Below, one piece after another: positions 33,156-45,154 of a stretch of DNA of 64,000 nt; position 1 is the stretch's first letter; each line of letters opens with the position of its first letter. Where the stretch lies: IMG/VR virus record IMGVR_UViG_3300017971_000185, positions 124,001 through 188,000 of that record. One strand, given 5' to 3'. Both the position numbers and the translations under genes were made by a program. Below the pieces are notes generated by a model. It was not told the DNA's origin, did no database searches, and worked only from the letters and a program-made list of their open reading frames with translations.

Positions 33156-33736
33156 AAGTAGTCACGCTAGCACGCAAGCCGTTTCCTGCGTCGGCGGCCG
33201 AGTGTGCCGTCGAGTGGGGAACAGCGAGTGTGAACATCGGGGCGAGTCGTGTGGGCGGTAAGCCGAGAACAACACACAAACATGGGAACAGGCGGACGCG
33301 GAATCGAGGTCCCACGATGAAAGAGGGCTTCAAGGTCGGAGACTATGCGTCTCCGGGGCGTCGTTACCCCGCCAACCTCATCCTCCAGCACCGGTCTTCT
33401 TGCGAGATCGTGGGGGAGCGCGAGGTTGCGAGTGGGGTTGCTGTACGGGAGCGGAGCGGCGGCAAGACGATCTTCTCCGAGACAGCCAAGCCTCCCATGG
33501 AGAACATGACTTACGGGGAGGGAGGCAAGGAGTCGATCCCAGATTGGCGATGCGCTGAGAGTTGTCCTGTTTCCGATCTCGATGCGCAGAGCGGAATCTC
33601 TACGAGCAAGGGACACGTCCGGCACAATGCGGGATCGTGGAAGGTCCGCAAGGTGGGCAATGTGGTCGCAGCGGTCGAGACTCCGCACACGGACACGGGT
33701 GGCGCATCGAGGTTTTTCAAACAGGTGAAGCCGTGA
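33152..33736 (+). CDS. Stand-alone methyltransferase middle (variable/TRD-like) module
   Basis: VVTLARKP...EWGT..VNI...RV, GRRYPANLILQH, WRCAESCPV..LDAQSG, DTGGASRFF; no catalytic or SAM-binding motif. Confidence 0.75.
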   Translation: MKVVTLARKPFPASAAECAVEWGTASVNIGASRVGGKPRTTHKHGNRRTRNRGPTMKEGFKVGDYASPGRRYPANLILQHRSSCEIVGEREVASGVAVRERSGGKTIFSETAKPPMENMTYGEGGKESIPDWRCAESCPVSDLDAQSGISTSKGHVRHNAGSWKVRKVGNVVAAVETPHTDTGGASRFFKQVKP

Positions 33737-35196
33737 AGGTGATTACCCTCGCCCGAGCGCCGTTGCGCGGGGCGGTTGCTCAGTCTTGCATCGAGTGGAG
33801 CACGGGAGCGATCAACATCGACGGAACACGCATTGCTGGACCAACATGGACGCGAAGCACGGAGTCGTTGGAGGACATTCGTGGCGGAAGGTACGGGTCT
33901 GCGTCGAAGGATCGCATCCCGGTTCCGCCACAAGCGATGCCGTCTGGGGGACGGTGGCCGTCCAACATGGTGCTCCAACACAAGCCGAGTTGCCGCCAGA
34001 CGGGAACGACCACGGCTCCCGGCTACATGATCAACCGCTGGACGGACGGAGCTAAGCCCTTCGGAGGCGGAGCCGGTCATCCTTACGAGGGTGAGAAGCA
34101 GCCAGATGAGAGCGTGACCGTGTGGGAGTGTGAAGAGGGGTGTGGGGTGGCGGGAGTTGATCAACAAGGTGGTCTTCTTACGAGCGGAAAACCTGTAGGC
34201 GCTCGTCATACGGGAGGGACTTTGTTGGCGGGCGGGGGTAACGAATACATGCTGACCGGCTACGGAGACACCGGAACTGCGTCTCGTTTCTTCAAGCAGG
34301 TACAGGAGACAGACATGCATGAGTTACCACAGGAGTTGATCGACTACCTGGAGACGATGATCACTCCGCCAGATGGTGAAGTTTTGATCGTGTCCGACAT
34401 GTCTGCTGTCAACTGGTCCGAGTACGAGGACAACCAGCTACACGGCCTTTTGATCGTCGGGAAGCGGGCGGACGAATTCTCAGGCAACGACTACATGGAG
34501 CAGATCTGGCGAGTGCTCCGTCCGGGTGCTCACGTCATGTTGATCGCATCCGATGAGGAGCCCACGGGACACACCGGGGCGTGTGCTCTGGAGGACAAGG
34601 GATTCGAGATCCGCGACTCTATCTTGCTCGTGCAAGAGCCCGGACGCATCCACTACGTTGCCAAGGCGGCAACGAAGGAGCGCAACGCGGGCATTGTTCC
34701 GTTTGAGCGCAAGGTCAAGGAGAAGCGCTTGTTCCCTAAGCCTGAGCATATGGATGATATCGAGCTGGAGTTTGCAGAGGTCAAGACGGAGGAAGAGATC
34801 GCCGCGTGGGTTGAGGAAGGTGCTTCGCGAATGGAGATCCCGAAGGACCATCGGCAGTGGTTTGACGAGCGCGAGGTCGAGATCGTCAAGAAGAAACAGA
34901 ATGACCATCCAACCATAAAGGCCAAGGATCTCCTCCGTCGTTTGCTTGGCGACTTGCCGGAAGGTTCACTTGTGGTCGATCCGTTCATGGGCTCGGGCTC
35001 GACGGGCATCGCGTGTGTCGAGGCCGGGATGGCCTTCACGGGGATCGAGCTTGAGATGGAAAGCCTCCAAATTGCCGATGCTCGTGTCCGGCATTGGGAT
35101 TCTGCCGAGCTACGTCCTTGGGCCGCAGAGGTAGTTAGCGAGGCAGAACAGCCAAAGCGCAAAAAGCGCAGTTTCTTGCAGTTGCGCGAAAAGTAA
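33733..35196 (+). CDS. Permuted methyltransferase: middle module, degenerate catalytic-like module and SAM-binding module (probable internal start at 34315)
   Basis: VITLARAP...GGRWPSNMVLQH...ASRFF; DYLETMITPPDGEVL; WRVLRPG...ALEDKGFEIRD without DPPY; HYVAKA, NDHPTIK, VVDPFMGSGSTG. AGGAG RBS at 34304 before ATG 34315. Confidence 0.8.
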   Translation: MKVITLARAPLRGAVAQSCIEWSTGAINIDGTRIAGPTWTRSTESLEDIRGGRYGSASKDRIPVPPQAMPSGGRWPSNMVLQHKPSCRQTGTTTAPGYMINRWTDGAKPFGGGAGHPYEGEKQPDESVTVWECEEGCGVAGVDQQGGLLTSGKPVGARHTGGTLLAGGGNEYMLTGYGDTGTASRFFKQVQETDMHELPQELIDYLETMITPPDGEVLIVSDMSAVNWSEYEDNQLHGLLIVGKRADEFSGNDYMEQIWRVLRPGAHVMLIASDEEPTGHTGACALEDKGFEIRDSILLVQEPGRIHYVAKAATKERNAGIVPFERKVKEKRLFPKPEHMDDIELEFAEVKTEEEIAAWVEEGASRMEIPKDHRQWFDEREVEIVKKKQNDHPTIKAKDLLRRLLGDLPEGSLVVDPFMGSGSTGIACVEAGMAFTGIELEMESLQIADARVRHWDSAELRPWAAEVVSEAEQPKRKKRSFLQLREK

Positions 35197-35441: not shown

Positions 35442-35759
35442 ATGAAGACCAAAGCGGACACCATCTTCACAATTCTCAACTTCGTTGTTGCTCTCGCTCT
35501 GACGGGAGTCGTGGCGAAGGTCGTGTTTGCTGACCTTCCGGTTTTGACCGAGTTGGCTCAGGCCAGGACTGAGTTGATACGGGTCGGGACTGAGCTACCA
35601 AAGTACGAGTACGCGATCGAGTCAATTCCAGATCTGGAGTGGGGCACGAAGGCTCAGGAGATGGGTCAAGCAGGCTGGACGCTTGTCTTTGCTCGCCGTG
35701 CCTCCGACAGTGCGGGCGACTTTCTGTACGAGTGCATCTGGCAGCGTCAGGTTCGTTGA
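35442..35759 (+). CDS. Membrane-anchored DUF4177-like protein
   Basis: N-terminal TM; YEYAIES...EMGQAGWTLV. Confidence 0.5.
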   Translation: MKTKADTIFTILNFVVALALTGVVAKVVFADLPVLTELAQARTELIRVGTELPKYEYAIESIPDLEWGTKAQEMGQAGWTLVFARRASDSAGDFLYECIWQRQVR

Positions 35760-36052
35760 TGGCAGAGATCATTCCCTTCGACGCTCTGATCAGCAAGGTC
35801 GATAGCGGCCGACTTCAGAGATCGTCGTGTCTCACGACGCGGATCGTTTATGCGGACGTGGAGAAGGGGATGTTTCGCGGCCTTGTTGATGCCTCCAAAC
35901 CAGAGAATCCTCCCTACGAAGTCAAGATTGATGCCAAGGCTCGGGTATGTCGCTGTACCTGTGAGGACTTCAAACGGAAGGCGGCTCCCTGCAAGCATCT
36001 AGTGGCTTTCGCAAGGGTAGCGCGAGCGATGACGAACGGGATGAGTTTGTAA
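35759..36052 (+). CDS. SWIM zinc-finger protein
   Basis: CRCTCEDF...PCKHLVA. Confidence 0.75.
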   Translation: MAEIIPFDALISKVDSGRLQRSSCLTTRIVYADVEKGMFRGLVDASKPENPPYEVKIDAKARVCRCTCEDFKRKAAPCKHLVAFARVARAMTNGMSL

Positions 36053-36077
36053 ACTTCTTGCCGAATCTCGCGTAGAG
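36049..36077 (+). promoter_or_regulatory. ECF-sigma-like phage promoter (drives the ligase)
   Basis: GTAAAC-N15-GCGTAGAG. Confidence 0.8.
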
Positions 36078-36095
36078 AGAACACGGGACCAGACC

Positions 36096-37271
36096 ATGGC
36101 TATCAGAGACATCGAGGAATTGGTCGCTACGCTGGAGGCTGCCAGCGAAGCCTACTACAACGGCGACCCCATCATGAGCGACGCGGAATTCGACGCGCTC
36201 GAAGATGAGCTTCGTAGTCTCGCGCCGAAGCACAAGTACTTCAAGCGCGTCGGAGCGAAGGCTTCCAAGACAAAGTGGGCCAAGGTCAAGCACGACGCTC
36301 CGATGGGCTCGCTGCTCAAGGTCAACACGGAGAAGGAGCTACACGCCTGGTACGACGCCTGCATCGGAGACCTGAAAGCCTACGCGAAGGGCTTGAAGGG
36401 TCAGGCGCGAAAGGACTTCTTGGCTCGGGTCGAGGAAGCCCAACTAGTCGTGAGTGAGAAGCTGGATGGCGCATCGGTCTCCCTCGTCTACAAGGACGGC
36501 AAGCTCATCCATGCATTGCTGCGAGGCGAGGGTGATGAGGGCGAGGACATTCTGTCCAATGTGATCAAGATGCTAGGTCTCCAGAAGGTTCAAAAGGGCT
36601 TCACGGGCTGGCAGCGTGGCGAGATCATCTTGGGCAAGAAGCTGCACACCAAGCATCTGGGCGAGTACAAGAGTCGTCGCAACGCTGCTGTTGGCATCTC
36701 GCGCCGAGAGTCGGATGCGTCAGCCTGCAAGTATCTGACGGTCAGCCACTACCAGGCGATTCGCAAGGGCGGCAAGGCGATCAAAGACAAGATCACCGAG
36801 TTTCTCATGCTGAAGAAGCGCATGTGTGCCACGCCGTTCTTCAAGCTAGTAGACGGTCCCGATGGTGTCGTGGAGATCTACGAGGAGTACGTCGAGGGCG
36901 CTCGCGCAGCGCTCGACTACGACATCGATGGGCTCGTTGTGGAATTCAATGACCCGGAGCTAATGGAGGTTCTGGGTGATTCGAGCGGTCGGCCCAAGGG
37001 AGCGAGGGCGTTCAAGTTTCCGCATGTAAAGAAAATCACGCGGTTGAGAGATATTCGCTGGCAGGTTGGCTTGTCGGGTCGTGTGACGCCCGTGGCCGAG
37101 TTTGATCCGGTCGATCTAGCGGGAGCGACACTAGCCCGAGCCAGTCTTGCTACGGCTAGGCACGTTGCCAAGCTGAGACTTTTCCCAGGTTGTCGTGTTC
37201 TTGTGTCACGCAGGAACGAAGTTATCCCGCGAATTGAAAAGAACGTGGACGAAGGTATCGATAATGAGTGA
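36096..37271 (+). CDS. ligA: NAD-dependent DNA ligase, N-terminal part (domain Ia, adenylation, OB)
   Basis: YYNGDPIMSDAEFD, SEKLDG, YDIDGLVV, ARAFKFP, WQVG.SGR.TPVA.FDPV.L.G, EVIPRI, then stop. Confidence 0.92.
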   Translation: MAIRDIEELVATLEAASEAYYNGDPIMSDAEFDALEDELRSLAPKHKYFKRVGAKASKTKWAKVKHDAPMGSLLKVNTEKELHAWYDACIGDLKAYAKGLKGQARKDFLARVEEAQLVVSEKLDGASVSLVYKDGKLIHALLRGEGDEGEDILSNVIKMLGLQKVQKGFTGWQRGEIILGKKLHTKHLGEYKSRRNAAVGISRRESDASACKYLTVSHYQAIRKGGKAIKDKITEFLMLKKRMCATPFFKLVDGPDGVVEIYEEYVEGARAALDYDIDGLVVEFNDPELMEVLGDSSGRPKGARAFKFPHVKKITRLRDIRWQVGLSGRVTPVAEFDPVDLAGATLARASLATARHVAKLRLFPGCRVLVSRRNEVIPRIEKNVDEGIDNE

Positions 37272-38181
37272 GCGTAAGTGCCTACGATGCGGGTGCGCCA
37301 TCGCCCATCTTCATTTCAATGCTAAGCGCTGTCCTCCGTGCGCGCGCGAGGTAGCTGAAGCAAAGGAACGCCAGCGTAAGAAAATTGTCTTGGCACCAGA
37401 TGCCGTTACCTGTCCTGTGTGCAAGAGGCGAATGAATTGCATAACGGCAGGACATTTCCGCAAGCATGGCTATCCGACAGCACAAGTATTCAAAAGGACC
37501 TTTTCTCTAGACACTTTGAAAGCTCCTTCGCTCTGTCAAGATCACTCTCAGTACATGCGGAAAAATTCGCCCACAAAAGGTAAGACTCGTACTCTTTCGG
37601 AAAGACGGCGGATGCGTCAAAACCGCCGGGGGAAAGGGGTAGGTGTCTGCGGCAAGTATGAGCGAACGCCAGAAATCCGAGCCCGTATTTCAGCAGGAGT
37701 AACTAAGTATCTCTTATCAAGAGAGGGAGATTTTGCACGAGGGTGGTTTGTCTATTCGGAGAAACTGGACGATGCGGTCTACGTTCGCTCTTCTTGGGAA
37801 GAGCGTGTTGTGGCGGTGTTTGATCTTCATCCTTGTGTTGAGTGGTTTGAAACTGAGCCTTTCTCGATTCCATACTTCTTCGCGGGAGTTACAAGACGCT
37901 ACGTGCCTGATTTTCTCCTTTGGCTGGAGGGAGGGATAAAGGAAGTGTGGGAAGTAAAGCCTGAGGAGTTTTTGAAGTTGGCCAAGAACCAGGCCAAGAT
38001 TGCGGCTCTGAATGATTACACTCGTCAGAGGGGGTACAACGCAAGAGTTGTGAGGCTTGTGGATATAGAGGGGATGGAGATGCAGGTGGGTCTACGACCG
38101 TGGAGAGGTTGTGGCCAGCCTTGGGTGCGGCTTGACGATCCGAGTTATCGCCCAGGAGGAGAAGCAAATGCCAAACCATAG
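37264..38181 (+). mobile_element. Free-standing TnsA-like PD-(D/E)xK homing endonuclease inserted in ligA
   Basis: CxxC Zn motifs, MucR/NUMOD3-like segments, RSSWEER...EPFSIPY...YVPDF...WEVKP; lower GC than flanks. Confidence 0.8.
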
Positions 38182-39202
38182 CTATTTTAAGCCTCCGAAG
38201 CGCTGCCCCGTATGTCGGACGACACTGGAGAGAGACGGCGCGTACCTCAAGTGCCCGAACGATCTCACGTGTCCGGCCCAGGTAGAGGGGAACATCAAGC
38301 GGTGGGTCACGAAGCTGGGAATCAAGGATCTGGGTGACTCGCTGATCAAGGCTTTGGTCGAGCACGGCAACATGAGGGAGCCTGCCGATCTGTACCATCT
38401 GCGGCCGAAGGTACTGGCTAACTTCCGCACGAGCGGCAAGAAGGTTGGCTTCTCGTCAGCGAACCGGATCGTGGACAACATCCAGGCAACGCGGGAGCTA
38501 CCGCTGGCGCGGTTCGTGGGTTCGCTCGGAATCGACATGTGCTCGCGGTCTGTCTGTGAGACCATCTGCGAAGCGGGTTTCGACACGCTGGGCAAGATGG
38601 TGGACGCGACCGTGGCAGATCTCATGACGGTCCCCAAGATGGGCAAGAGCAAGGCTGAGGCTTTTGTGGAGGGTCTTCAGGCCCGCAAGACATTCATCAA
38701 CAACCTCCTCGACGCTGGTGTGCGCATCAAGAAGCCGATCGTGGGCAAGATGACCGGCAAGAGCTTCTGTTTCACGCAGGTTCGCGACAAGGATCTGGAG
38801 CGCAAGATCGAGGCTCAGGGCGGCATCGTGAAGGGCAACTTCAGCCGAAGCCTGTCCTACGTCGTGACGAGCAAGGCAGGGCTCACGAAGTCTGGAAGCA
38901 AGCTGGACAAGGCTCGGCAGCACGATATTCCCATCATCGATGTGGATGAGCTTGAGGACATGCTAGGATCTACGCGGAGGTTTGGCGGCTTGCCGCTGCT
39001 TCCTGATTCTGTACCGTGGGGCACAATCTACGGTCTGCCCTACGATTTGCCTGACGGTCGGCGGGTGTGGCTGTGCCGGGGCAAGTACAATCGTGTACGC
39101 TTCTACACAGACGACGGAGAACAGGTGGGCCCTGAGCAATCCAACGTGGTTCCTGCTGTGGCTTTTGCTATAGCGCAGGGATGGCGACAAGCTCATGGAT
39201 GA
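38168..39202 (+). CDS. ligA: NAD-dependent DNA ligase, C-terminal part (Zn finger, HhH, BRCT) plus an extra C-terminal segment
   Basis: Own GGAGGAG RBS and ATG; CPVC...CPN..C, LGIKDLG, SLGI..C, VPKMGKSKA, GKSFCFT...QGG...V...SKLDKA. Confidence 0.88.
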   Translation: MPNHSYFKPPKRCPVCRTTLERDGAYLKCPNDLTCPAQVEGNIKRWVTKLGIKDLGDSLIKALVEHGNMREPADLYHLRPKVLANFRTSGKKVGFSSANRIVDNIQATRELPLARFVGSLGIDMCSRSVCETICEAGFDTLGKMVDATVADLMTVPKMGKSKAEAFVEGLQARKTFINNLLDAGVRIKKPIVGKMTGKSFCFTQVRDKDLERKIEAQGGIVKGNFSRSLSYVVTSKAGLTKSGSKLDKARQHDIPIIDVDELEDMLGSTRRFGGLPLLPDSVPWGTIYGLPYDLPDGRRVWLCRGKYNRVRFYTDDGEQVGPEQSNVVPAVAFAIAQGWRQAHG

Positions 39203-39566
39203 TATATTCCCACAGGAGCGTTACGATCGAGCACGGCAATTGGCTGAGGAGTTGTACGGATCTCCTCTTGCCGTGAGTCGTCATCGAGTCGTTTTTCGCG
39301 ACGGCGATGAAGTCGTCAAGGTGCCGACGCGAGAAAGCGGCGTTGCTGCTTGCGACTGTGAGTTGACGCAGCAAGGTGAGCTTTTGGCGAAGACGCGACC
39401 TGATCGCGAGTTGTCAAAGGAAACTGGACTTCCCATCGTGAGGATGGAACATGTGGAACACGTGGGTTGGTCGGATGAGCTCGACTGGACCTGGAGCATC
39501 GACTGTGGGCAGGTGGGTCGGACCAAAGACGGCCGGTTAGTTGCCTATGATTGGGAACATTTCTAA
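39195..39566 (+). CDS. Minimal protein-kinase-like fold protein (123 aa)
   Basis: RHRVVF..EVVKVP..G...C.E..IVRMEHV..SIDCGQVG..GRLVAYDW parallels the beta3 Lys, alphaC Glu, catalytic-loop Asp and DFG-like Asp. Confidence 0.5.
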   Translation: MDDIFPQERYDRARQLAEELYGSPLAVSRHRVVFRDGDEVVKVPTRESGVAACDCELTQQGELLAKTRPDRELSKETGLPIVRMEHVEHVGWSDELDWTWSIDCGQVGRTKDGRLVAYDWEHF

Positions 39567-40954: not shown

Positions 40955-43900
40955 GTGGCTCAGTCGTTTCTCAAGCTAGCCCGAGAGAAGGCACGGCCAA
41001 CCGTCGAGCGTCGTGAGTGGATGGACGACGCGGTGATGGAATTGGTCACTGCCGAGATGCTTCCTGGTGTGATCGACAAGTGTATCGAGGCTGGCCTGTA
41101 TGCTGCCGACCTGGAGACGACGGGGCTCGACGTTCGGGTTTTCGAGGGACGTACCAGGGACCAGATCGTTGGCGCGTGTCTGAGCCACGATGGCGTTCAC
41201 GGCTACTATGCGCCGGTACGCCACAAGGGCGCAGGAGCCAAGCACAACATCCCCGTCAGCTTGTTTGAATCCGAGCTACGGCGGTTGTTCGCGTCGAAGG
41301 CGAAGCCGATCTTCCACAAGGGGAAATTCGATCACGAGTTGCTCCAATTCAGTGGCGGAGAGGCCCTCGCTGAATTCGATGATCCGAATGGCTGGGAAGA
41401 CTCGCTGATTCTGGCTTACCTGTACAACAACAAGCTGGAGCGGATTGGCCTCAAGTACCTGGCGGACCAATTCTTCAACCCACATGTCGAGGAGGATCGC
41501 AAGCGACGCAAGAACGGCGAGAAGGTCCCGTCGTACATGATCGAGCTATGGGAGTTGTTCCCAGACGGCAAGGAAGGAGAGCACTACGATTTCTCCGAGC
41601 TAGACCCCGGATGGGAGCCCGTTGTCTGGTACGGCAGTGGTGATGCGCTTTTCACGTATCGGCTGTTCAAGCTGTTTCATCCCAAAGTGGTCAAGCCCGA
41701 AGAAGGCGTCAGCCAGCGCACCATCTACAACATCGAGAAGATGTGCTGCACGGCGACGCGGTGGATGGAGCGATGTCGAGTCCACACCAATCAGGACCGG
41801 GTTGCTGAGCTTATCCGGCTTGGGCAGAAGGAGTTGTTCGATTCGATCAAGGCCATCTACGACTTCTGCGAGGAAGCCTGCGGGCGAGACATCGCTCCGG
41901 CGTGGTGGCATGTCTTGGCGAAGGGAGTGCCCTTCGAGGGGGACAAGGAGGATCTTCCTCCGTTGTTCAACTCCGAGGATGCGAAGCAGGACTACAGGAT
42001 TCAGATCGAGGAAGCCAAGAAGGTCGTAGAGCACAATCGCAAGCGTCCCACATGGGACCGGTCCGAAACATTGGCCGAGGTCGAGGAGAGACAGAACAAG
42101 AAGGTCACGAAGAGCCTGTCGGATGGAAAGACATATGAGTTTCCTTACCAGTGTGACGTGATGAGCGCGCGGCGGCTTGGGCCGTTGTTTGAGGAGATGG
42201 AGATTCCTGGCCTGAAGCGCACGGAGGAGTCCAAGCAGGTCATGACTTCGGCGGCCGAGTTGGATCGTTTGACCGACCTGCACGGGGAGACTTTCCCGTT
42301 CATGGCACGGATCAAGCGCTTTCGTGAGGTCCAAACAGCCTTGTCGCGTTTCCTGTTGCCGATGCGGGATAACGTATGTCCCGAGGACGGGACGCTCAAG
42401 ATCGACTTTGAGGGATGGCGCACGGACACGGGTCGGTTCTCTACACCATCGGACAAGAACCCGAAGCGCAACGGCGGCACGAGCTATATGATGCACGCGA
42501 CGCCAGCGACGTATGATCCGAAGCGTCCTGAGTGCCTCCGTCGTTTACGTGAATGCATTACGGCTCGACCTGGCCGCATCTTGTGCTCAATCGACTACTC
42601 TGGCGAAGAGATCAGGATCATCACGAACCTCAGTCGTGAGCCCAAGTGGATCATCGAGCATTTCCGTTGCAGCGAATGTGGCAGGACGTTCGATCAAGGC
42701 GATGGGAAGAACACACCGGAGGCTCCTCCACACTTCTGTCCGCGCTGCGGTTCGGACAAGATTGGAGACATCCACACGCTGTCCACGATCGCGTTTTACG
42801 GAGAGGATTCGCAGAAGGACAAAAAGCAATTCAAGCAACTGAGGAAGCAGGCCAAAGCATGCAATTTTGCTTTATGTTACGGCGGTGCTGGGAGTGCCGT
42901 ACAGCGCTCGACGGGTGTTGACGAGAACGAAGGTTGGCGCATCTATCGACAATTCACGGCGACGTATACCCAGCTTCAGAGTTGGATCAAGGGGCAGCAC
43001 GAATTCGTCAAGCAGAATGGATACGTGCTCACGGCATTTGGGCGGCGTTGTCCACTTCCCGACATCCACATGCCGAAGAGGGATCCGAGGACGGGACGCG
43101 ATAACGGATTCTTCATCTCCAAGGCAAAACGGAACGCAGTGAATGCGCCGATCCAGGGGTGTTTGAATTCGGATACGCGGATTCCTACGTCTCTTGGTCT
43201 TAGGCGCATCGCAGACCTACAAGATCAGACTTTTCAGGTGTGGACAGGTACGGCTTGGCAAGACGCTAGAGCTTTCGCTTCGGGGAAAAAGCGACTTTGC
43301 ATGACTGTGTTTGACTCTGGGCGTGTCTTGAAAACAAGCCCGGATCATCGATTTCGTGTCTGGACTGAAGAAGGGTTTGAGTGGGTGAGGCAGGAGGATT
43401 TGACGCCAGAGTGTTGGGTCGCCTGCAATGCGGAAGCTATCGAGTTGCCAGAACCAACCTACGAGTCACACAATTGGAAAGGATTTGGCATCCAGGGAAA
43501 CAGCCCAGTGTTGTGGGAATTTCTGGGGATGGTTTATGGGGATGGTTCTCTTTACCACGATGGGTTGAAGGTCTATGTGGGCGAAGCTAACGAGAGTATC
43601 GCGACTGATTTTTTGGCGGAGGAGTATGCACGAGCGTGGGTGAACAAGCTCAACGATGCCCTTGGTGTGGGAGCGACGTGTCGGAAAAAGAAACGCCCTG
43701 AGAATGAGAAGCATAAACGGCCCACGTGGGAGATCTGCATCTACAACACGGCTTTTCGTAGGTTTTGTTGTGAGGTCTTGGGGGTAGAAGATCAGAACAC
43801 GTGGACGAAGCGTTTTCCCTCAGCGGTTTGGAGCGAGTCAATCAGCAACAGAGCAGCTTTCCTGCGTGGATACTTCAGCGCGGACGGGGGCATGAGTCCA

Positions 43901-45153
43901 TCAGGGGACGCAGCGTCGGTGAGGAGTGTATATCTAGCGCTTCTGCAAGATGCCCAAGCGTTGCTGCACTCTATCGGAATTCGGGCGTCCTATCGGTCGA
44001 GATGTCTGCGTGTGTTTCAAGCCGGCCAAACGTTCGATTTTGGAAAACCCCACCAGCTCACGAAAGCGCAGGCGATCGAGAACAGAGAGATCCCATGGAT
44101 GGGGCAGTGGTATCGTCTGCCCACGGATCTCGTTTGCCAGATAGGCGCCTGCGTGCGGCAATCGTCTGTGTATAAGGCGCTCCCACGTGAGCAAAAATCG
44201 GCTGTGTTGAGGCTATGTGTTGGGTCTGGTAGCAAGCCTCAGTGCCTCAGGTATCTCAAAAGGTTGCCCCCTGACGAGGTCCCTGTTTCCATTTGGGAAG
44301 CGTTAAAGTACGACTATGAGACTCCGGTCGTGACGGAAGACTCCACCACGATGGTGGATATGTACGACATTGAGGTGTTTGACGATGAGCACGCTTTTGT
44401 AGCGGATGGGGTCGTAGTCCATAACAGCGGGGCTGACATCCTGAAGCTGGCGATGTCTCTGATCTACAAGGAGTGCAAGAAACGCGACTGGCTGGAGAAG
44501 GTCTACATGGTCGCGTGCATGCATGACGAGATCGTTTTCGAGATCGTGACGGACATCGTGGAGGAAGCGCTCAACGTCATCATGCCGTTGATGATTCGCA
44601 ACTCGGCAATCCTCAAGTTGAAGTGGCCGATTCCGTTGATGCTCGACTGCGAGATGGGGTACGACTGGATGGTTCCCTGGAACCTTGTGGAGTACACTTC
44701 AGGTAAAGCGGAATGGCCGGAGGAGATCAAGTCGTTCTTTCCCAAGGCCGTTGCCGGATCGGCAGCGGTTACGCCAGATGCCGGAGATCCAGATCCGATC
44801 GCTCCGGTTCAACTCACCAACCGTGCTGAATCTGCAAATGTTCGTCTGGGTGTCGTGGAGCCGCCTCCAGATTCAGTCCCAGATTCGGCCCCGCCAGACC
44901 CGGCCCCGCCAGATTCGGTCCCGGTCAGTGTTCCTGATTTCAAGGCAGGCGATGTCTACGTCCACAGACTACGAAAGCCATTGCGGCAGGGTACAGTAGA
45001 GAGTCTGGCAGAGGTTCTCTACAAGTGCCGAAACAGAGGTTCTCATCCCATCGAGATTCGTTCGTCAGATGGGGAACACGTGCTTTGGAAGAGTACGGAC
45101 TTCACGATCAATCCCGTGCAGTTTGCCGTACTCGCCGACTATAAGGGTATCTG

Positions 45154-45154
<1 letters not shown>
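40955..45154 (+). CDS. polA: Family A DNA polymerase with 3'-5' exonuclease; intein-containing
   Basis: [46 protein letters not shown]...YG, TAFGRR, NAPIQG|[13 protein letters not shown]. Confidence 0.95.
43160..44425 (+). mobile_element. Intein (422 aa) with LAGLIDADG endonuclease in polA
   Basis: NAPIQG|CLNSDT ... TSPDHRF ... FLGMVYGDG ... [10 protein letters not shown] ... [10 protein letters not shown]|SGAD. Confidence 0.95.

What the first reader, a model, noticed from the sequence alone, without database searches (positions are those of the whole stretch)
36096..39202. NAD-dependent ligase split into two genes by a free-standing endonuclease, with no room for an intron
Seen: LigA stops after the OB fold (EVIPRIEKNVDEGIDNE*). 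A TnsA-like endonuclease ORF overlaps both halves and fills the whole gap. The Zn-finger/HhH/BRCT half restarts with its own GGAGGAG RBS and ATG. There is no non-coding space for a group I core. Established: Aeh1 nrdA is split by mobE and works as two polypeptides. Inference: a two-chain LigA that assembles in trans.
Basis: partly seen in the sequence, partly recalled or inferred. Interest (0 to 1): 0.65.

Follow-up and report, generated by a model that had tools for sequence, protein, structure and literature searches.

The report
Phage ligase split by homing endonuclease
In a ~497 kb uncultured phage, the NAD-dependent DNA ligase gene is cut into two separately translated genes by a mobile TnsA-like endonuclease gene inserted at the linker between two ligase domains; the same kind of break is already annotated in phage T5, so the two-gene ligase is not new, but the endonuclease family that makes the break appears undescribed.

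Summary
LigA-N (36096-37271; Ia, adenylation, OB), a 305-aa endonuclease (37264-38181) and LigA-C (38168-39202; Zn, HhH, BRCT) lie in three frames. They overlap by 8 and 14 nt, and GGAGGAG sits 6 nt before the LigA-C ATG.

There is no intron match and no intein piece. The closest allele (L037, 83-90% identical) is one intact 653-aa gene. DNA homology to it is lost from ~37118 to 38191, and that block has GC3 of 0.46-0.49 against 0.75-0.80 in the flanks. The last ~50 LigA-N codons match distant split alleles better than the nearest intact one, which looks like a co-conversion tract.

Every close homologue of the endonuclease, in about ten phage lineages, sits at the same linker. On a tree of 120 alleles (41 split), the split/intact state changes at least 12 times. 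The endonuclease combines a ROS/MucR-like zinc finger, NUMOD3 and a TnsA-fold nuclease with its catalytic residues conserved.

One relative (L038) keeps the split with only a 68-aa endonuclease remnant. T5 ligA/ligB break at the same linker.

Verdict: a free-standing homing endonuclease has produced a two-polypeptide LigA. Assembly and activity of the halves are inferred, not shown.

The parts
36096..37271 (+). LigA-N gene (391 aa): domain Ia, adenylation domain with the KLDG motif, OB fold, and a short tail
   Evidence: Pfam. It is 83% identical to the N part of the intact 653-aa allele P0053/L037. KxDG and the Ia residues Y20, D29 and D33 are conserved across 41 split alleles. dN/dS is 0.15-0.35 against relatives.
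37118..37241 (+). Co-conversion-like tract inside LigA-N: the last ~40 OB-fold codons, which arrived with the endonuclease
   Evidence: DNA identity to L037 falls from ~85% to ~50% at about 37117. Residues 341-391 are 43% identical to L037 but 71-78% identical to the distant split alleles L011 and L038. GC3 is 0.46 against 0.75 upstream.
37242..37271 (+). Insert-borne C-terminal tail of LigA-N (NVDEGIDNE plus stop), replacing the native linker
   Evidence: Split alleles share VE[AK]N[LV]DEGI..; intact alleles read VEKVLxPSKNARFxVPxxCPSC. E381 and N383 are invariant in 41 split alleles. The tail codons vary at synonymous positions.
37264..38181 (+). Free-standing homing-endonuclease gene (305 aa): N-terminal zinc ribbon, ROS/MucR-like zinc finger, NUMOD3-like helices, TnsA-fold PD-(D/E)xK nuclease
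   Evidence: Pfam on this copy and on the family (TnsA-like N in 47/48, NUMOD3 in 12, ROS_MUCR in 7). Fold and Foldseek. E179, D216 and E230-x-K232 are conserved. GC3 is 0.49. Synonymous sites are saturated with dN 0.37-0.49.
38155..38161 (+). Shine-Dalgarno sequence GGAGGAG for LigA-C, lying inside the endonuclease ORF
   Evidence: Sequence. Comparable SD-like sequences precede the C-half start in most split relatives.
38168..38968 (+). LigA-C gene, ligase part (267 aa): Zn finger (4 Cys), HhH, BRCT. The first 8 codons come from the insert
   Evidence: Pfam. It is 90% identical to residues 393-653 of intact P0053. DNA homology to L037 resumes at 38192. dN/dS is 0.11-0.15 against L037 and L038.
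38969..39202 (+). 77-aa C-terminal extension of LigA-C beyond the point where the intact allele stops; function unknown
   Evidence: L037 LigA ends at ...DMLG*. No Pfam or PHROG match. No homologue in any related locus. GC3 is 0.56 against 0.80 in the ligase part.

Best explanation
A free-standing, site-specific homing endonuclease gene (HEG) has inserted into the unstructured linker between the OB fold and the zinc finger of the phage's NAD-dependent ligase. The nuclease has a TnsA-type PD-(D/E)xK fold. Its DNA-binding part is a ROS/MucR-like zinc finger plus NUMOD3-like modules. The inserted block supplies three things: a stop codon and a conserved short tail for the N half, the HEG itself, and a Shine-Dalgarno sequence, an ATG and a few codons for the C half. 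The three genes are probably transcribed together and translated separately in a coupled fashion, with no RNA or protein splicing. The ligase then works as two polypeptides: Ia-NTase-OB, which carries the adenylation and catalytic chemistry, and Zn-HhH-BRCT, which provides DNA binding. They would come together on nicked DNA, possibly helped by the insert-borne tail. The HEG persists by homing. Its presumed action is to cut intact ligA alleles of co-infecting relatives near the linker; repair from the HEG-carrying allele then copies the HEG together with about 125-150 nt of upstream ligase sequence. Shown here: the gene anatomy, the absence of any intron or intein signature, the foreign mosaic block, the patchy distribution, and purifying selection on all three genes. 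Inferred: cleavage specificity, co-transcription, and assembly and activity of the two ligase chains.
For: Anatomy: three frames, 8- and 14-nt overlaps, own SD and ATG. The same design appears in 10 split loci.
Empty site: the intact allele L037/P0053 is 83% (N) and 90% (C) identical, with the same upstream SWIM gene.
Foreign block: DNA homology to L037 is lost at ~37118-38191. GC3 there is 0.46-0.49 against 0.75-0.80 in the flanks. The last 50 LigA-N residues resemble distant split alleles rather than the nearest intact allele.
Site specificity: every HEG homologue of >=35% identity lies between a LigA-N and a LigA-C gene, and always at the same linker position.
Mobility: at least 12 split/intact changes on a tree of 120 alleles, 11 of them forced by well-supported branches. 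The window's sister is the intact allele.
Nuclease likely active: TnsA fold, catalytic E/D/ExK conserved in 48 homologues, NUMOD3 in 12/48, dN well below saturated dS.
Ligase halves under constraint: dN/dS 0.11-0.35, with catalytic and Zn residues conserved in split alleles. L038 keeps both halves although its HEG has decayed to a 68-aa remnant.
Precedent: T5-like phages carry ligA/ligB broken at the same linker (PMC3632103).
No intron. No Hint or intein piece: with L020 as a positive control for detection.
Complex model: weak support, 0.53 against a best control of 0.00.
Against: There is no transcript evidence; no RNA run holds the locus. There is no biochemical evidence that any split LigA, T5's included, works as two chains; I found none in the searchable literature. 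The complex prediction is only a weak pass, in a range where passes are more often wrong than right, and it may reflect memory of solved single-chain LigA structures. The genome also has an ATP-dependent-ligase-like gene (PF01068, 44 bits), so the NAD ligase may not be essential. Endonuclease activity and its target are entirely inferred. Tight long-term linkage of the HEG to ligA would also fit a domesticated role. 'Split' was scored by protein length in the tree, so a few rows could be truncated gene calls.
Confidence: 0.8

Rival explanations
1. The intervening sequence is a self-splicing group I or II intron that carries the endonuclease ORF. Splicing of the mRNA would restore one continuous ligase reading frame.
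For: Phage homing endonucleases are often intron-encoded, and the halves align end to end with the intact allele. No RNA data exist to exclude splicing directly.
Against: Rfam gives no intron-family match up to E=10 in the locus, nor up to E=1 in 7 related loci. The whole interval is protein-coding under purifying selection. LigA-N has its own stop, and LigA-C has a strong SD and ATG that recur in 10 loci. The length and content of the interval vary freely between relatives: 215 nt in L038, and more than 2.4 kb with extra ORFs in L021. T5 has promoters, not an intron, in its 202-nt spacer according to its annotation.
Confidence: 0.03
2. The gene is a 'fractured gene' in the sense of Dassa et al. 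2009. Split-intein halves flank the endonuclease gene, and protein trans-splicing joins the two ligase pieces.
For: [quoted passage not shown] A relative, L020, does have such a split intein elsewhere in its ligase.
Against: No Hint or intein domain is found in either half at E<=0.1. The N half ends 9 residues after the last residue it shares with intact alleles, and the C half starts 12 residues before the first zinc-finger Cys. That leaves no room for intein fragments of about 100 and 35 aa. The same Pfam scan does detect the intein pieces in L020, so the negative result is meaningful.
Confidence: 0.02
3. The split ligase is a dead gene. The halves are remnants without function, and the phage relies on the host LigA or on its own ATP-dependent-ligase-like protein.
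For: A second ligase-like gene exists in the genome. No split LigA has been shown to be active.
Against: Both halves keep intact ORFs and catalytic motifs in 41 split alleles. dN/dS is 0.11-0.35. L038 keeps both halves while the HEG itself decays. The split form is fixed across T5-like phages. The ATP-ligase-like protein is only 224 aa and reads KFNG where ligases have KxDG (the comparison is my own reading).
Confidence: 0.07
4. The TnsA-like protein is no longer, or never was, a selfish homing endonuclease. It would instead be a domesticated partner of the ligase halves, for example a nick- or end-processing nuclease forming a three-part repair module, inherited vertically.
For: It is linked strictly to ligA over deep divergence, at 35-61% identity. 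It is under purifying selection and translationally coupled to both halves.
Against: The window's nearest allele is intact and lacks it. The block has a foreign GC3 and a co-conversion-like mosaic. There are at least 12 gains or losses on the ligase tree. L038 and T5 keep the split without the nuclease. NUMOD3 modules are typical of homing endonucleases (the association is established knowledge).
Confidence: 0.08

Closest known systems
Aeromonas phage Aeh1 nrdA split by the free-standing HNH endonuclease mobE (Friedrich et al. 2007; Crona et al. 2011, PMC3045599)
   Same: An essential DNA-metabolism gene is cut into two separately translated genes by a free-standing HEG, with no intron or intein. 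Short tails that arose with the insertion sit on the two polypeptides. Here a tail (VE[AK]N[LV]DEGI) is likewise conserved in all split alleles and absent from intact ones.
   Different: The host gene differs (LigA, not NrdA). The nuclease family differs (TnsA-fold PD-(D/E)xK with NUMOD3 and a ROS/MucR finger, not HNH). The break lies at a domain linker rather than inside a catalytic domain. Activity of the halves and any role for the tails are untested here. The sample is far larger: 41 split alleles and at least 12 state changes.
Phage T5 and T5-like ligA/ligB, annotated 'NAD-dependent DNA ligase subunits A and B' (NC_005859 T5.116/T5.117; PMC3632103, PMC4319617)
   Same: The break falls at the same OB/Zn linker: T5 reads ...VIPCIVERVYD* followed by MKIEIPTQCPSC.... 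The domain content of the halves is the same.
   Different: T5 has no endonuclease between the halves, only a 202-nt spacer with annotated promoters. Ceto and L009 have unrelated small ORFs there. The T5 tail lacks the NLDEGI motif. The ligases are only about 30% identical. Whether the T5 split is a relic of the same element is unknown.
Fractured genes: split intein plus free-standing Vsr-like or GIY-YIG HEG (Dassa et al. 2009, PMC2677866)
   Same: The gene order is N half, HEG, C half, in phage DNA-metabolism genes including a DNA ligase. Control elements are brought in with the HEG.
   Different: There are no intein fragments at this break. The nuclease family differs. L020 carries both kinds of break in a single ligase gene.
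I-Ssp6803I, the PD-(D/E)xK homing endonuclease (Zhao et al. 2007, cited in PMC3424549)
   Same: It is a homing endonuclease built on the restriction-enzyme fold.
   Different: I-Ssp6803I is intron-encoded, belongs to a different Pfam family (PF11645) and has no NUMOD3 or zinc-finger modules. It did not appear among the fold matches, which were led by TnsA.
TnsA of Tn7 (PDB 1f1z, 1t0f)
   Same: It is the best structural and sequence match of the nuclease domain, with the catalytic E, D and ExK positions conserved.
   Different: No TnsB/C/D genes lie beside it. TnsA's C-terminal domain is absent, and the N-terminal modules are of the homing-endonuclease type. The context is a split gene in a phage, not a transposon.

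Membership tests
NAD+-dependent DNA ligase (LigA) | Domain Ia with its NAD+-contact residues, plus a nucleotidyltransferase domain with the KxDG lysine | tested here: met
   Pfam Nlig-Ia (weak, 0.0017) and DNA_ligase_aden (9e-31). KLDG is present. Y20, D29, D33, D124 and G125 are invariant and K122 is nearly invariant in 41 split alleles.
NAD+-dependent DNA ligase (LigA) | OB fold, four-Cys zinc finger, HhH and BRCT domains | tested here: met
   DNA_ligase_OB at 1e-19 in the N half. DNA_ligase_ZBD, HHH_5 and BRCT in the C half. The four Cys are nearly invariant.
NAD+-dependent DNA ligase (LigA) | All domains on one polypeptide | tested here: not met
   There is a stop at 37269-37271 and a separate ATG at 38168 in another frame. 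The intact relatives P0053 and L005 are single chains of 653 and 632 aa.
NAD+-dependent DNA ligase (LigA) | NAD+-dependent nick-sealing activity | not testable with these tools
   This needs co-expression of the halves and an enzyme assay.
Free-standing homing endonuclease gene | Own ORF inserted in or beside a conserved gene, without a surrounding intron or intein | tested here: met
   for the ORFs. for no intron. for no intein pieces.
Free-standing homing endonuclease gene | Present in some alleles and absent from closely related ones (empty sites), patchy on the host-gene tree | tested here: met
   An intact allele exists at 83-90% identity. There are at least 12 state changes among 120 alleles.
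Free-standing homing endonuclease gene | Co-conversion of flanking host-gene sequence along with the HEG | tested here: met
   Breaks in DNA homology, a mosaic identity profile and a GC3 shift.
Free-standing homing endonuclease gene | Nuclease domain with intact catalytic residues, joined to modular DNA-binding motifs | tested here: met
   TnsA fold. E179, E230 and K232 are invariant and D216 is nearly invariant. NUMOD3 is found in 12/48 and ROS_MUCR in 7/48 family members. The window's own copy falls below the Pfam threshold for these two but aligns with those members.
Free-standing homing endonuclease gene | Site-specific cleavage of the HEG-less allele, and homing in mixed infection | not testable with these tools
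   This needs the purified enzyme and an L037-type target.
Tn7-type transposon (TnsA as a transposase subunit) | TnsA encoded together with TnsB/TnsC and transposon ends | tested here: not met
   In all 10 loci the immediate neighbours are the two ligase halves. Only the nuclease domain is shared with TnsA. A genome-wide TnsB search was not run.
Group I / group II intron | Conserved ribozyme core detectable by covariance model | tested here: not met
   There is no intron-family match at E<=10 in window 35800-39500, nor at E<=1 in 7 related loci.
Split-intein 'fractured gene' | Hint N-fragment at the end of the N half and C-fragment at the start of the C half | tested here: not met
   No Hint or Intein_splicing match. 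The tails are only 9 and 12 residues long. As a positive control, the L020 intein pieces are detected.
T5-type two-gene LigA (subunits A and B) | Break between the OB fold and the zinc finger, each half with its own translation start | tested here: met
   Domain content of the Ceto halves. T5 tail and head sequences. Window anatomy.

The most novel reading that the evidence does not exclude
The endonuclease cassette may carry its own repair kit. Besides the stop, SD and ATG, it delivers a conserved peptide tail (VE-x-N-[LV]-D-E-G-I on LigA-N, and a short head on LigA-C). That tail could let the two ligase chains dock. This would make the OB/Zn linker a safe site that a dedicated, previously undescribed TnsA-fold/NUMOD3 homing-endonuclease family has invaded repeatedly in large phages. 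The long-known T5 ligA/ligB split would then be a fossil of such an invasion.
Probability: 0.3. Interest if true: 0.7.

Novelty: new variant of a known kind. Interest (0 to 1): 0.5.

Why it matters
Genes split by free-standing homing endonucleases and still working as two polypeptides are known mainly from a few cases, chiefly Aeh1 nrdA/mobE. Crona et al. proposed that insert-derived tails could be a general way to neutralise such fragmentation.

This locus offers a much larger natural series at one site:
- 41 split and 79 intact alleles
- at least 12 transitions between the two states
- a decayed-HEG intermediate (L038)
- a relative with a split-intein break and an intein-less break in the same gene (L020)
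- a tail motif conserved only in split alleles

It also points to a homing-endonuclease architecture that I could not find described: a TnsA-fold nuclease with NUMOD3 and a ROS/MucR-like finger. Finally, it gives a plausible origin for the two-gene ligase of T5-like phages. A naturally two-chain LigA and a new long-target nuclease scaffold could both be of use in enzyme engineering.

Tried and rejected
- **Phage nucleotide search:** a search of the locus against 50,697 phage records found nothing. Protein-level phage matches to the ligase halves are only about 25-32% identical.
- **Distant TnsA-like matches:** phage matches to the endonuclease (Xanthomonas and Yersinia phages; IMG/VR L027-L036, about 30% over the nuclease domain only) are not next to ligase genes, and I did not count them as family members. 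PHROGs labels the nuclease domain 'head closure' or 'endonuclease', which was not informative.
- **HEG-less variants:** laying contigs of four runs showed no HEG-less variant at >=85% likeness. The joints reported there involve other organisms' ligase genes.
- **Promoters and terminators:** the scan found no more sites than shuffled sequence, so it gives no evidence for or against internal promoters.
- **Complex prediction:** N half with C half gave weak support (0.53; best control 0.00). At scores of 0.60 or under, this mark was reached by only 7 of 80 solved complexes and by both mismatched pairs that passed. The three runs agree in at least 93% of contacts and the partner pLDDT is at least 83. 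My own alignments were used, so the calibration holds only roughly, and solved LigA structures may be remembered.
- **Endonuclease paralogues:** none were found elsewhere in the 497 kb genome.
- **dN/dS for the endonuclease:** no ratio could be computed because synonymous sites are saturated.
- **77-aa tail of LigA-C:** no family or relative was found.
- **Searches not used:** the large representative-protein search, because the word search and family scans had already settled the proteins. No alternative genetic code was used.
Full report
**1. The observation**

The window is part of a 497,194-bp IMG/VR virus record, estimated 94% complete. Three genes on the + strand fill 36096-39202.
- **LigA-N** (36096-37271, 391 aa) ends ...EVIPRIEKNVDEGIDNE*. 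It matches the NAD-ligase adenylation domain (9e-31), the OB fold (1e-19) and, weakly, domain Ia.
- **The endonuclease.** The next frame is open from 37195, but its homologues start at the ATG at 37264. That gives a 305-aa protein ending at 38181, which matches Tn7_TnsA-like_N at 6e-11. Its ATG overlaps the ligase stop as ATGAGTGA.
- **LigA-C** starts at the ATG at 38168, 6 nt after GGAGGAG (38155-38161) and 14 nt before the endonuclease stop. It carries the ligase zinc finger, HhH and BRCT.

The three genes use three different frames, and no non-coding base lies between the halves. The same 4.3 kb is found without differences in contigs of three public DNA runs and in two further IMG/VR contigs. 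The only corrections are the true start codons.

**2. The split is a derived insertion into an intact gene**

A word search with LigA-N found P0053, a single 653-aa LigA. Its DNA (L037) has the same upstream SWIM-finger gene. P0053 is 83% identical to LigA-N and 90% identical to LigA-C, and the two alignments abut at P0053 residues 392/393.

DNA identity to L037 runs at about 85% from 36096 to about 37117. It collapses to about 50% through the end of LigA-N and resumes at 87% from 38192 to 38968.

The non-homologous block (about 37118-38191) therefore holds three things:
- the last ~50 codons of the OB fold
- the whole endonuclease gene
- the first 8 codons of LigA-C

Its third-position GC is 0.46-0.49, against 0.75-0.80 in the flanking ligase sequence.

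At protein level, LigA-N residues 341-391 are only 43% identical to the near-identical intact allele. They are 71-78% identical to split alleles that are otherwise just 40-60% identical. This is the mosaic expected when a homing endonuclease gene is copied into a new allele together with flanking donor sequence.

**3. No intron and no intein**
- **Intron.** Rfam covariance models with permissive filters gave only three chance-level matches (E 6-10) to unrelated eukaryotic and archaeal RNAs, and no intron family. Seven related loci gave nothing relevant.
- **Intein.** Pfam finds no Hint or intein piece in either half. The N half ends 9 residues after the last residue shared with intact alleles. 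The C half begins 12 residues before the first zinc-finger cysteine. Split-intein fragments cannot fit in that space.
- **Positive control.** The negative intein result is meaningful because relative L020 has a genuine split intein elsewhere in its ligase. A Hint N-piece follows KLDG-x-S, a DUF559/Vsr-like endonuclease gene comes next, and then an intein C-piece; the same scan detects all of them. L020 also has the TnsA-like endonuclease at the OB/Zn linker, and that break has no intein.

**4. The endonuclease**

A word search found 51 homologues, 40-61% identical apart from the window's own.

Their alignment shows, in order:
- an optional N-terminal zinc ribbon
- a CPxC...H...H finger
- NPTxG...KGKG...GKYxRT helices
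- a nuclease core with E179, E198, E227, E230 and K232 invariant and D216 nearly so

Scanning all 48 aligned members against Pfam gave these counts:

| Pfam family | Members matched (of 48) |
|---|---|
| TnsA-like N | 47 |
| Phage_endo_I | 16 |
| NUMOD3 | 12 |
| ROS_MUCR | 7 |

The AlphaFold model (mean pLDDT 88.6) matches TnsA structures 1t0f and 1f1z at E 7e-7. Against L011 and L013, synonymous sites are saturated while dN is 0.37-0.49, so the gene is under purifying selection.

NUMOD3 modules are a hallmark of homing endonucleases (established knowledge). I found no paper that mentions NUMOD3 together with TnsA.

**5. The endonuclease is dedicated to this site and is mobile**

Contexts were recovered for three homologues by exact look-up and for the IMG/VR loci L011-L026. 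These are about ten distinct lineages, on contigs of up to 618 kb. In every locus with >=35% identity, the endonuclease sits between a LigA-N and a LigA-C gene.

The break is at one linker position:
- split alleles read VIPxVE[AK]N[LV]DEGI..*
- intact alleles read VIPYVEKVLxPSKNARFxVPxxCPSC

Each C half has its own start 8-22 codons before the zinc finger. Most have an SD-like sequence, and the start abuts or overlaps the endonuclease stop.

A maximum-likelihood tree of the N regions of 120 alleles (41 split, 79 intact, scored by length) needs at least 12 changes of state, 11 of them forced by well-supported branches. The window's sister, with full support, is the intact P0053. This was a quick search with SH-aLRT support only, and the N region includes the co-converted tract. 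That tract would tend to cluster split alleles, not scatter them.

**6. Do the halves work?**

This is inferred, not shown.

Evidence in favour:
- dN/dS of both halves is 0.11-0.35, including 0.23 and 0.15 between two split alleles, the window and L038.
- The KxDG motif, the Ia residues and the four zinc cysteines are conserved in split alleles.
- L038 keeps both halves with their own starts, although its endonuclease has decayed to a 68-aa ORF. That ORF aligns to residues 45-89 of the window's enzyme at 60% identity, E 3e-18.
- T5 and its relatives carry ligA and ligB broken at the same linker, annotated as subunits A and B (PMC3632103; PMC4319617).
- The tail motif is conserved at the protein level with synonymous variation, and E381 and N383 are invariant. 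This recalls the insert-derived tails that are essential in the split NrdA of Aeh1 (PMC3045599). Part of that conservation could instead serve the endonuclease's ribosome-binding site, since the GAAGG formed by the D-E-G codons lies 8 nt before its ATG.

Weak or contrary evidence:
- A complex prediction of the two halves gave weak support: 0.53 against a best control of 0.00. In this score range passes are more often wrong than right, and solved LigA structures may be remembered.
- The genome also encodes a 224-aa ATP-dependent-ligase-like protein, so the NAD ligase need not be essential.
- No RNA run holds the locus.

**7. Comparison with what is known, and novelty**

The mechanism matches Aeh1 nrdA/mobE. 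The product matches the T5-type two-gene LigA. The gene order matches the 'fractured genes' of Dassa et al. (PMC2677866), but without inteins. The two-chain ligase itself is therefore not new.

What appears new:
- the endonuclease family (a TnsA fold with homing-type DNA-binding modules)
- its strict association with one linker of ligA across many large phages
- direct signatures of its mobility
- the series of evolutionary stages available: empty site, occupied site, decayed endonuclease, and extra cargo in L021

I rate this a new variant of a known kind, of moderate interest.

**8. Limits**
- All phages involved are uncultured.
- No transcript or protein data exist.
- The cleavage target is unknown.
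- Split status in the tree was assigned by length.
- The relation to the T5 split is conjecture.

Noticed in passing
window 38969-39202: LigA-C runs 77 aa past the point where the intact allele stops (...DMLG*). The extension has no Pfam, PHROG or locus homologue. Its GC3 is 0.56 against 0.80 in the ligase part, so it looks like a separately acquired piece fused by loss of the stop codon.
   Followed up: partly
window 40955-45154: A 1399-aa family-A DNA polymerase ORF appears to be interrupted by an intein with LAGLIDADG-type motifs (C...VVHNS boundaries, by my own reading of the translation). The homologous polymerase in L038 carries DNA_pol_A, LAGLIDADG_3 and DNA_pol_A Pfam hits. This would be a second mobile element in the replication module.
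   Followed up: no
L020:970-3526: This relative's ligase is in three pieces. A split intein interrupts it after motif I (KLDG-x-S|C), with a DUF559/Vsr-like endonuclease gene between the intein halves. The TnsA-like endonuclease also sits at the OB/Zn linker, with no intein there.
   Followed up: yes
L038:1376-1582: A 68-aa ORF between the ligase halves is a remnant of the endonuclease. It keeps only the ROS/MucR-like finger and is 60% identical to residues 45-89 of the window's enzyme. The split therefore persists after the endonuclease decays.
   Followed up: yes
L021:2379-4808: Here the insert is larger. A 335-aa ORF lies between LigA-N and the endonuclease; it contains a DGQHR-like motif by my own reading but has no Pfam hit. 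A 134-aa ORF follows the endonuclease. These look like cargo genes riding in the same site.
   Followed up: partly
G000:C1:339997-340539 (L041:1453-2130, minus strand): The same phage genome encodes a 224-aa ATP-dependent-ligase-like protein (PF01068, 44 bits). Its motif I reads KFNG rather than KxDG, and no OB domain was detected. It may be a second ligase or another nucleotidyltransferase.
   Followed up: partly
L040:13365-15318 (phage T5) and L002, L009: T5 ligA/ligB break at the same OB/Zn linker, with a 202-nt spacer that carries annotated promoters. Ceto and L009 have unrelated small ORFs without Pfam matches between their halves. These may be relics of older insertions at the same site.
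   Followed up: partly
window 35759-36052 and 33562-35196: Upstream of the ligase lies a 97-aa SWIM-type zinc-finger ORF (CxC...CxH) that is conserved in L037 and L005. Further upstream is a 544-aa ORF with a DPFMGSGST motif typical of DNA methyltransferases (my own reading).
   Followed up: no
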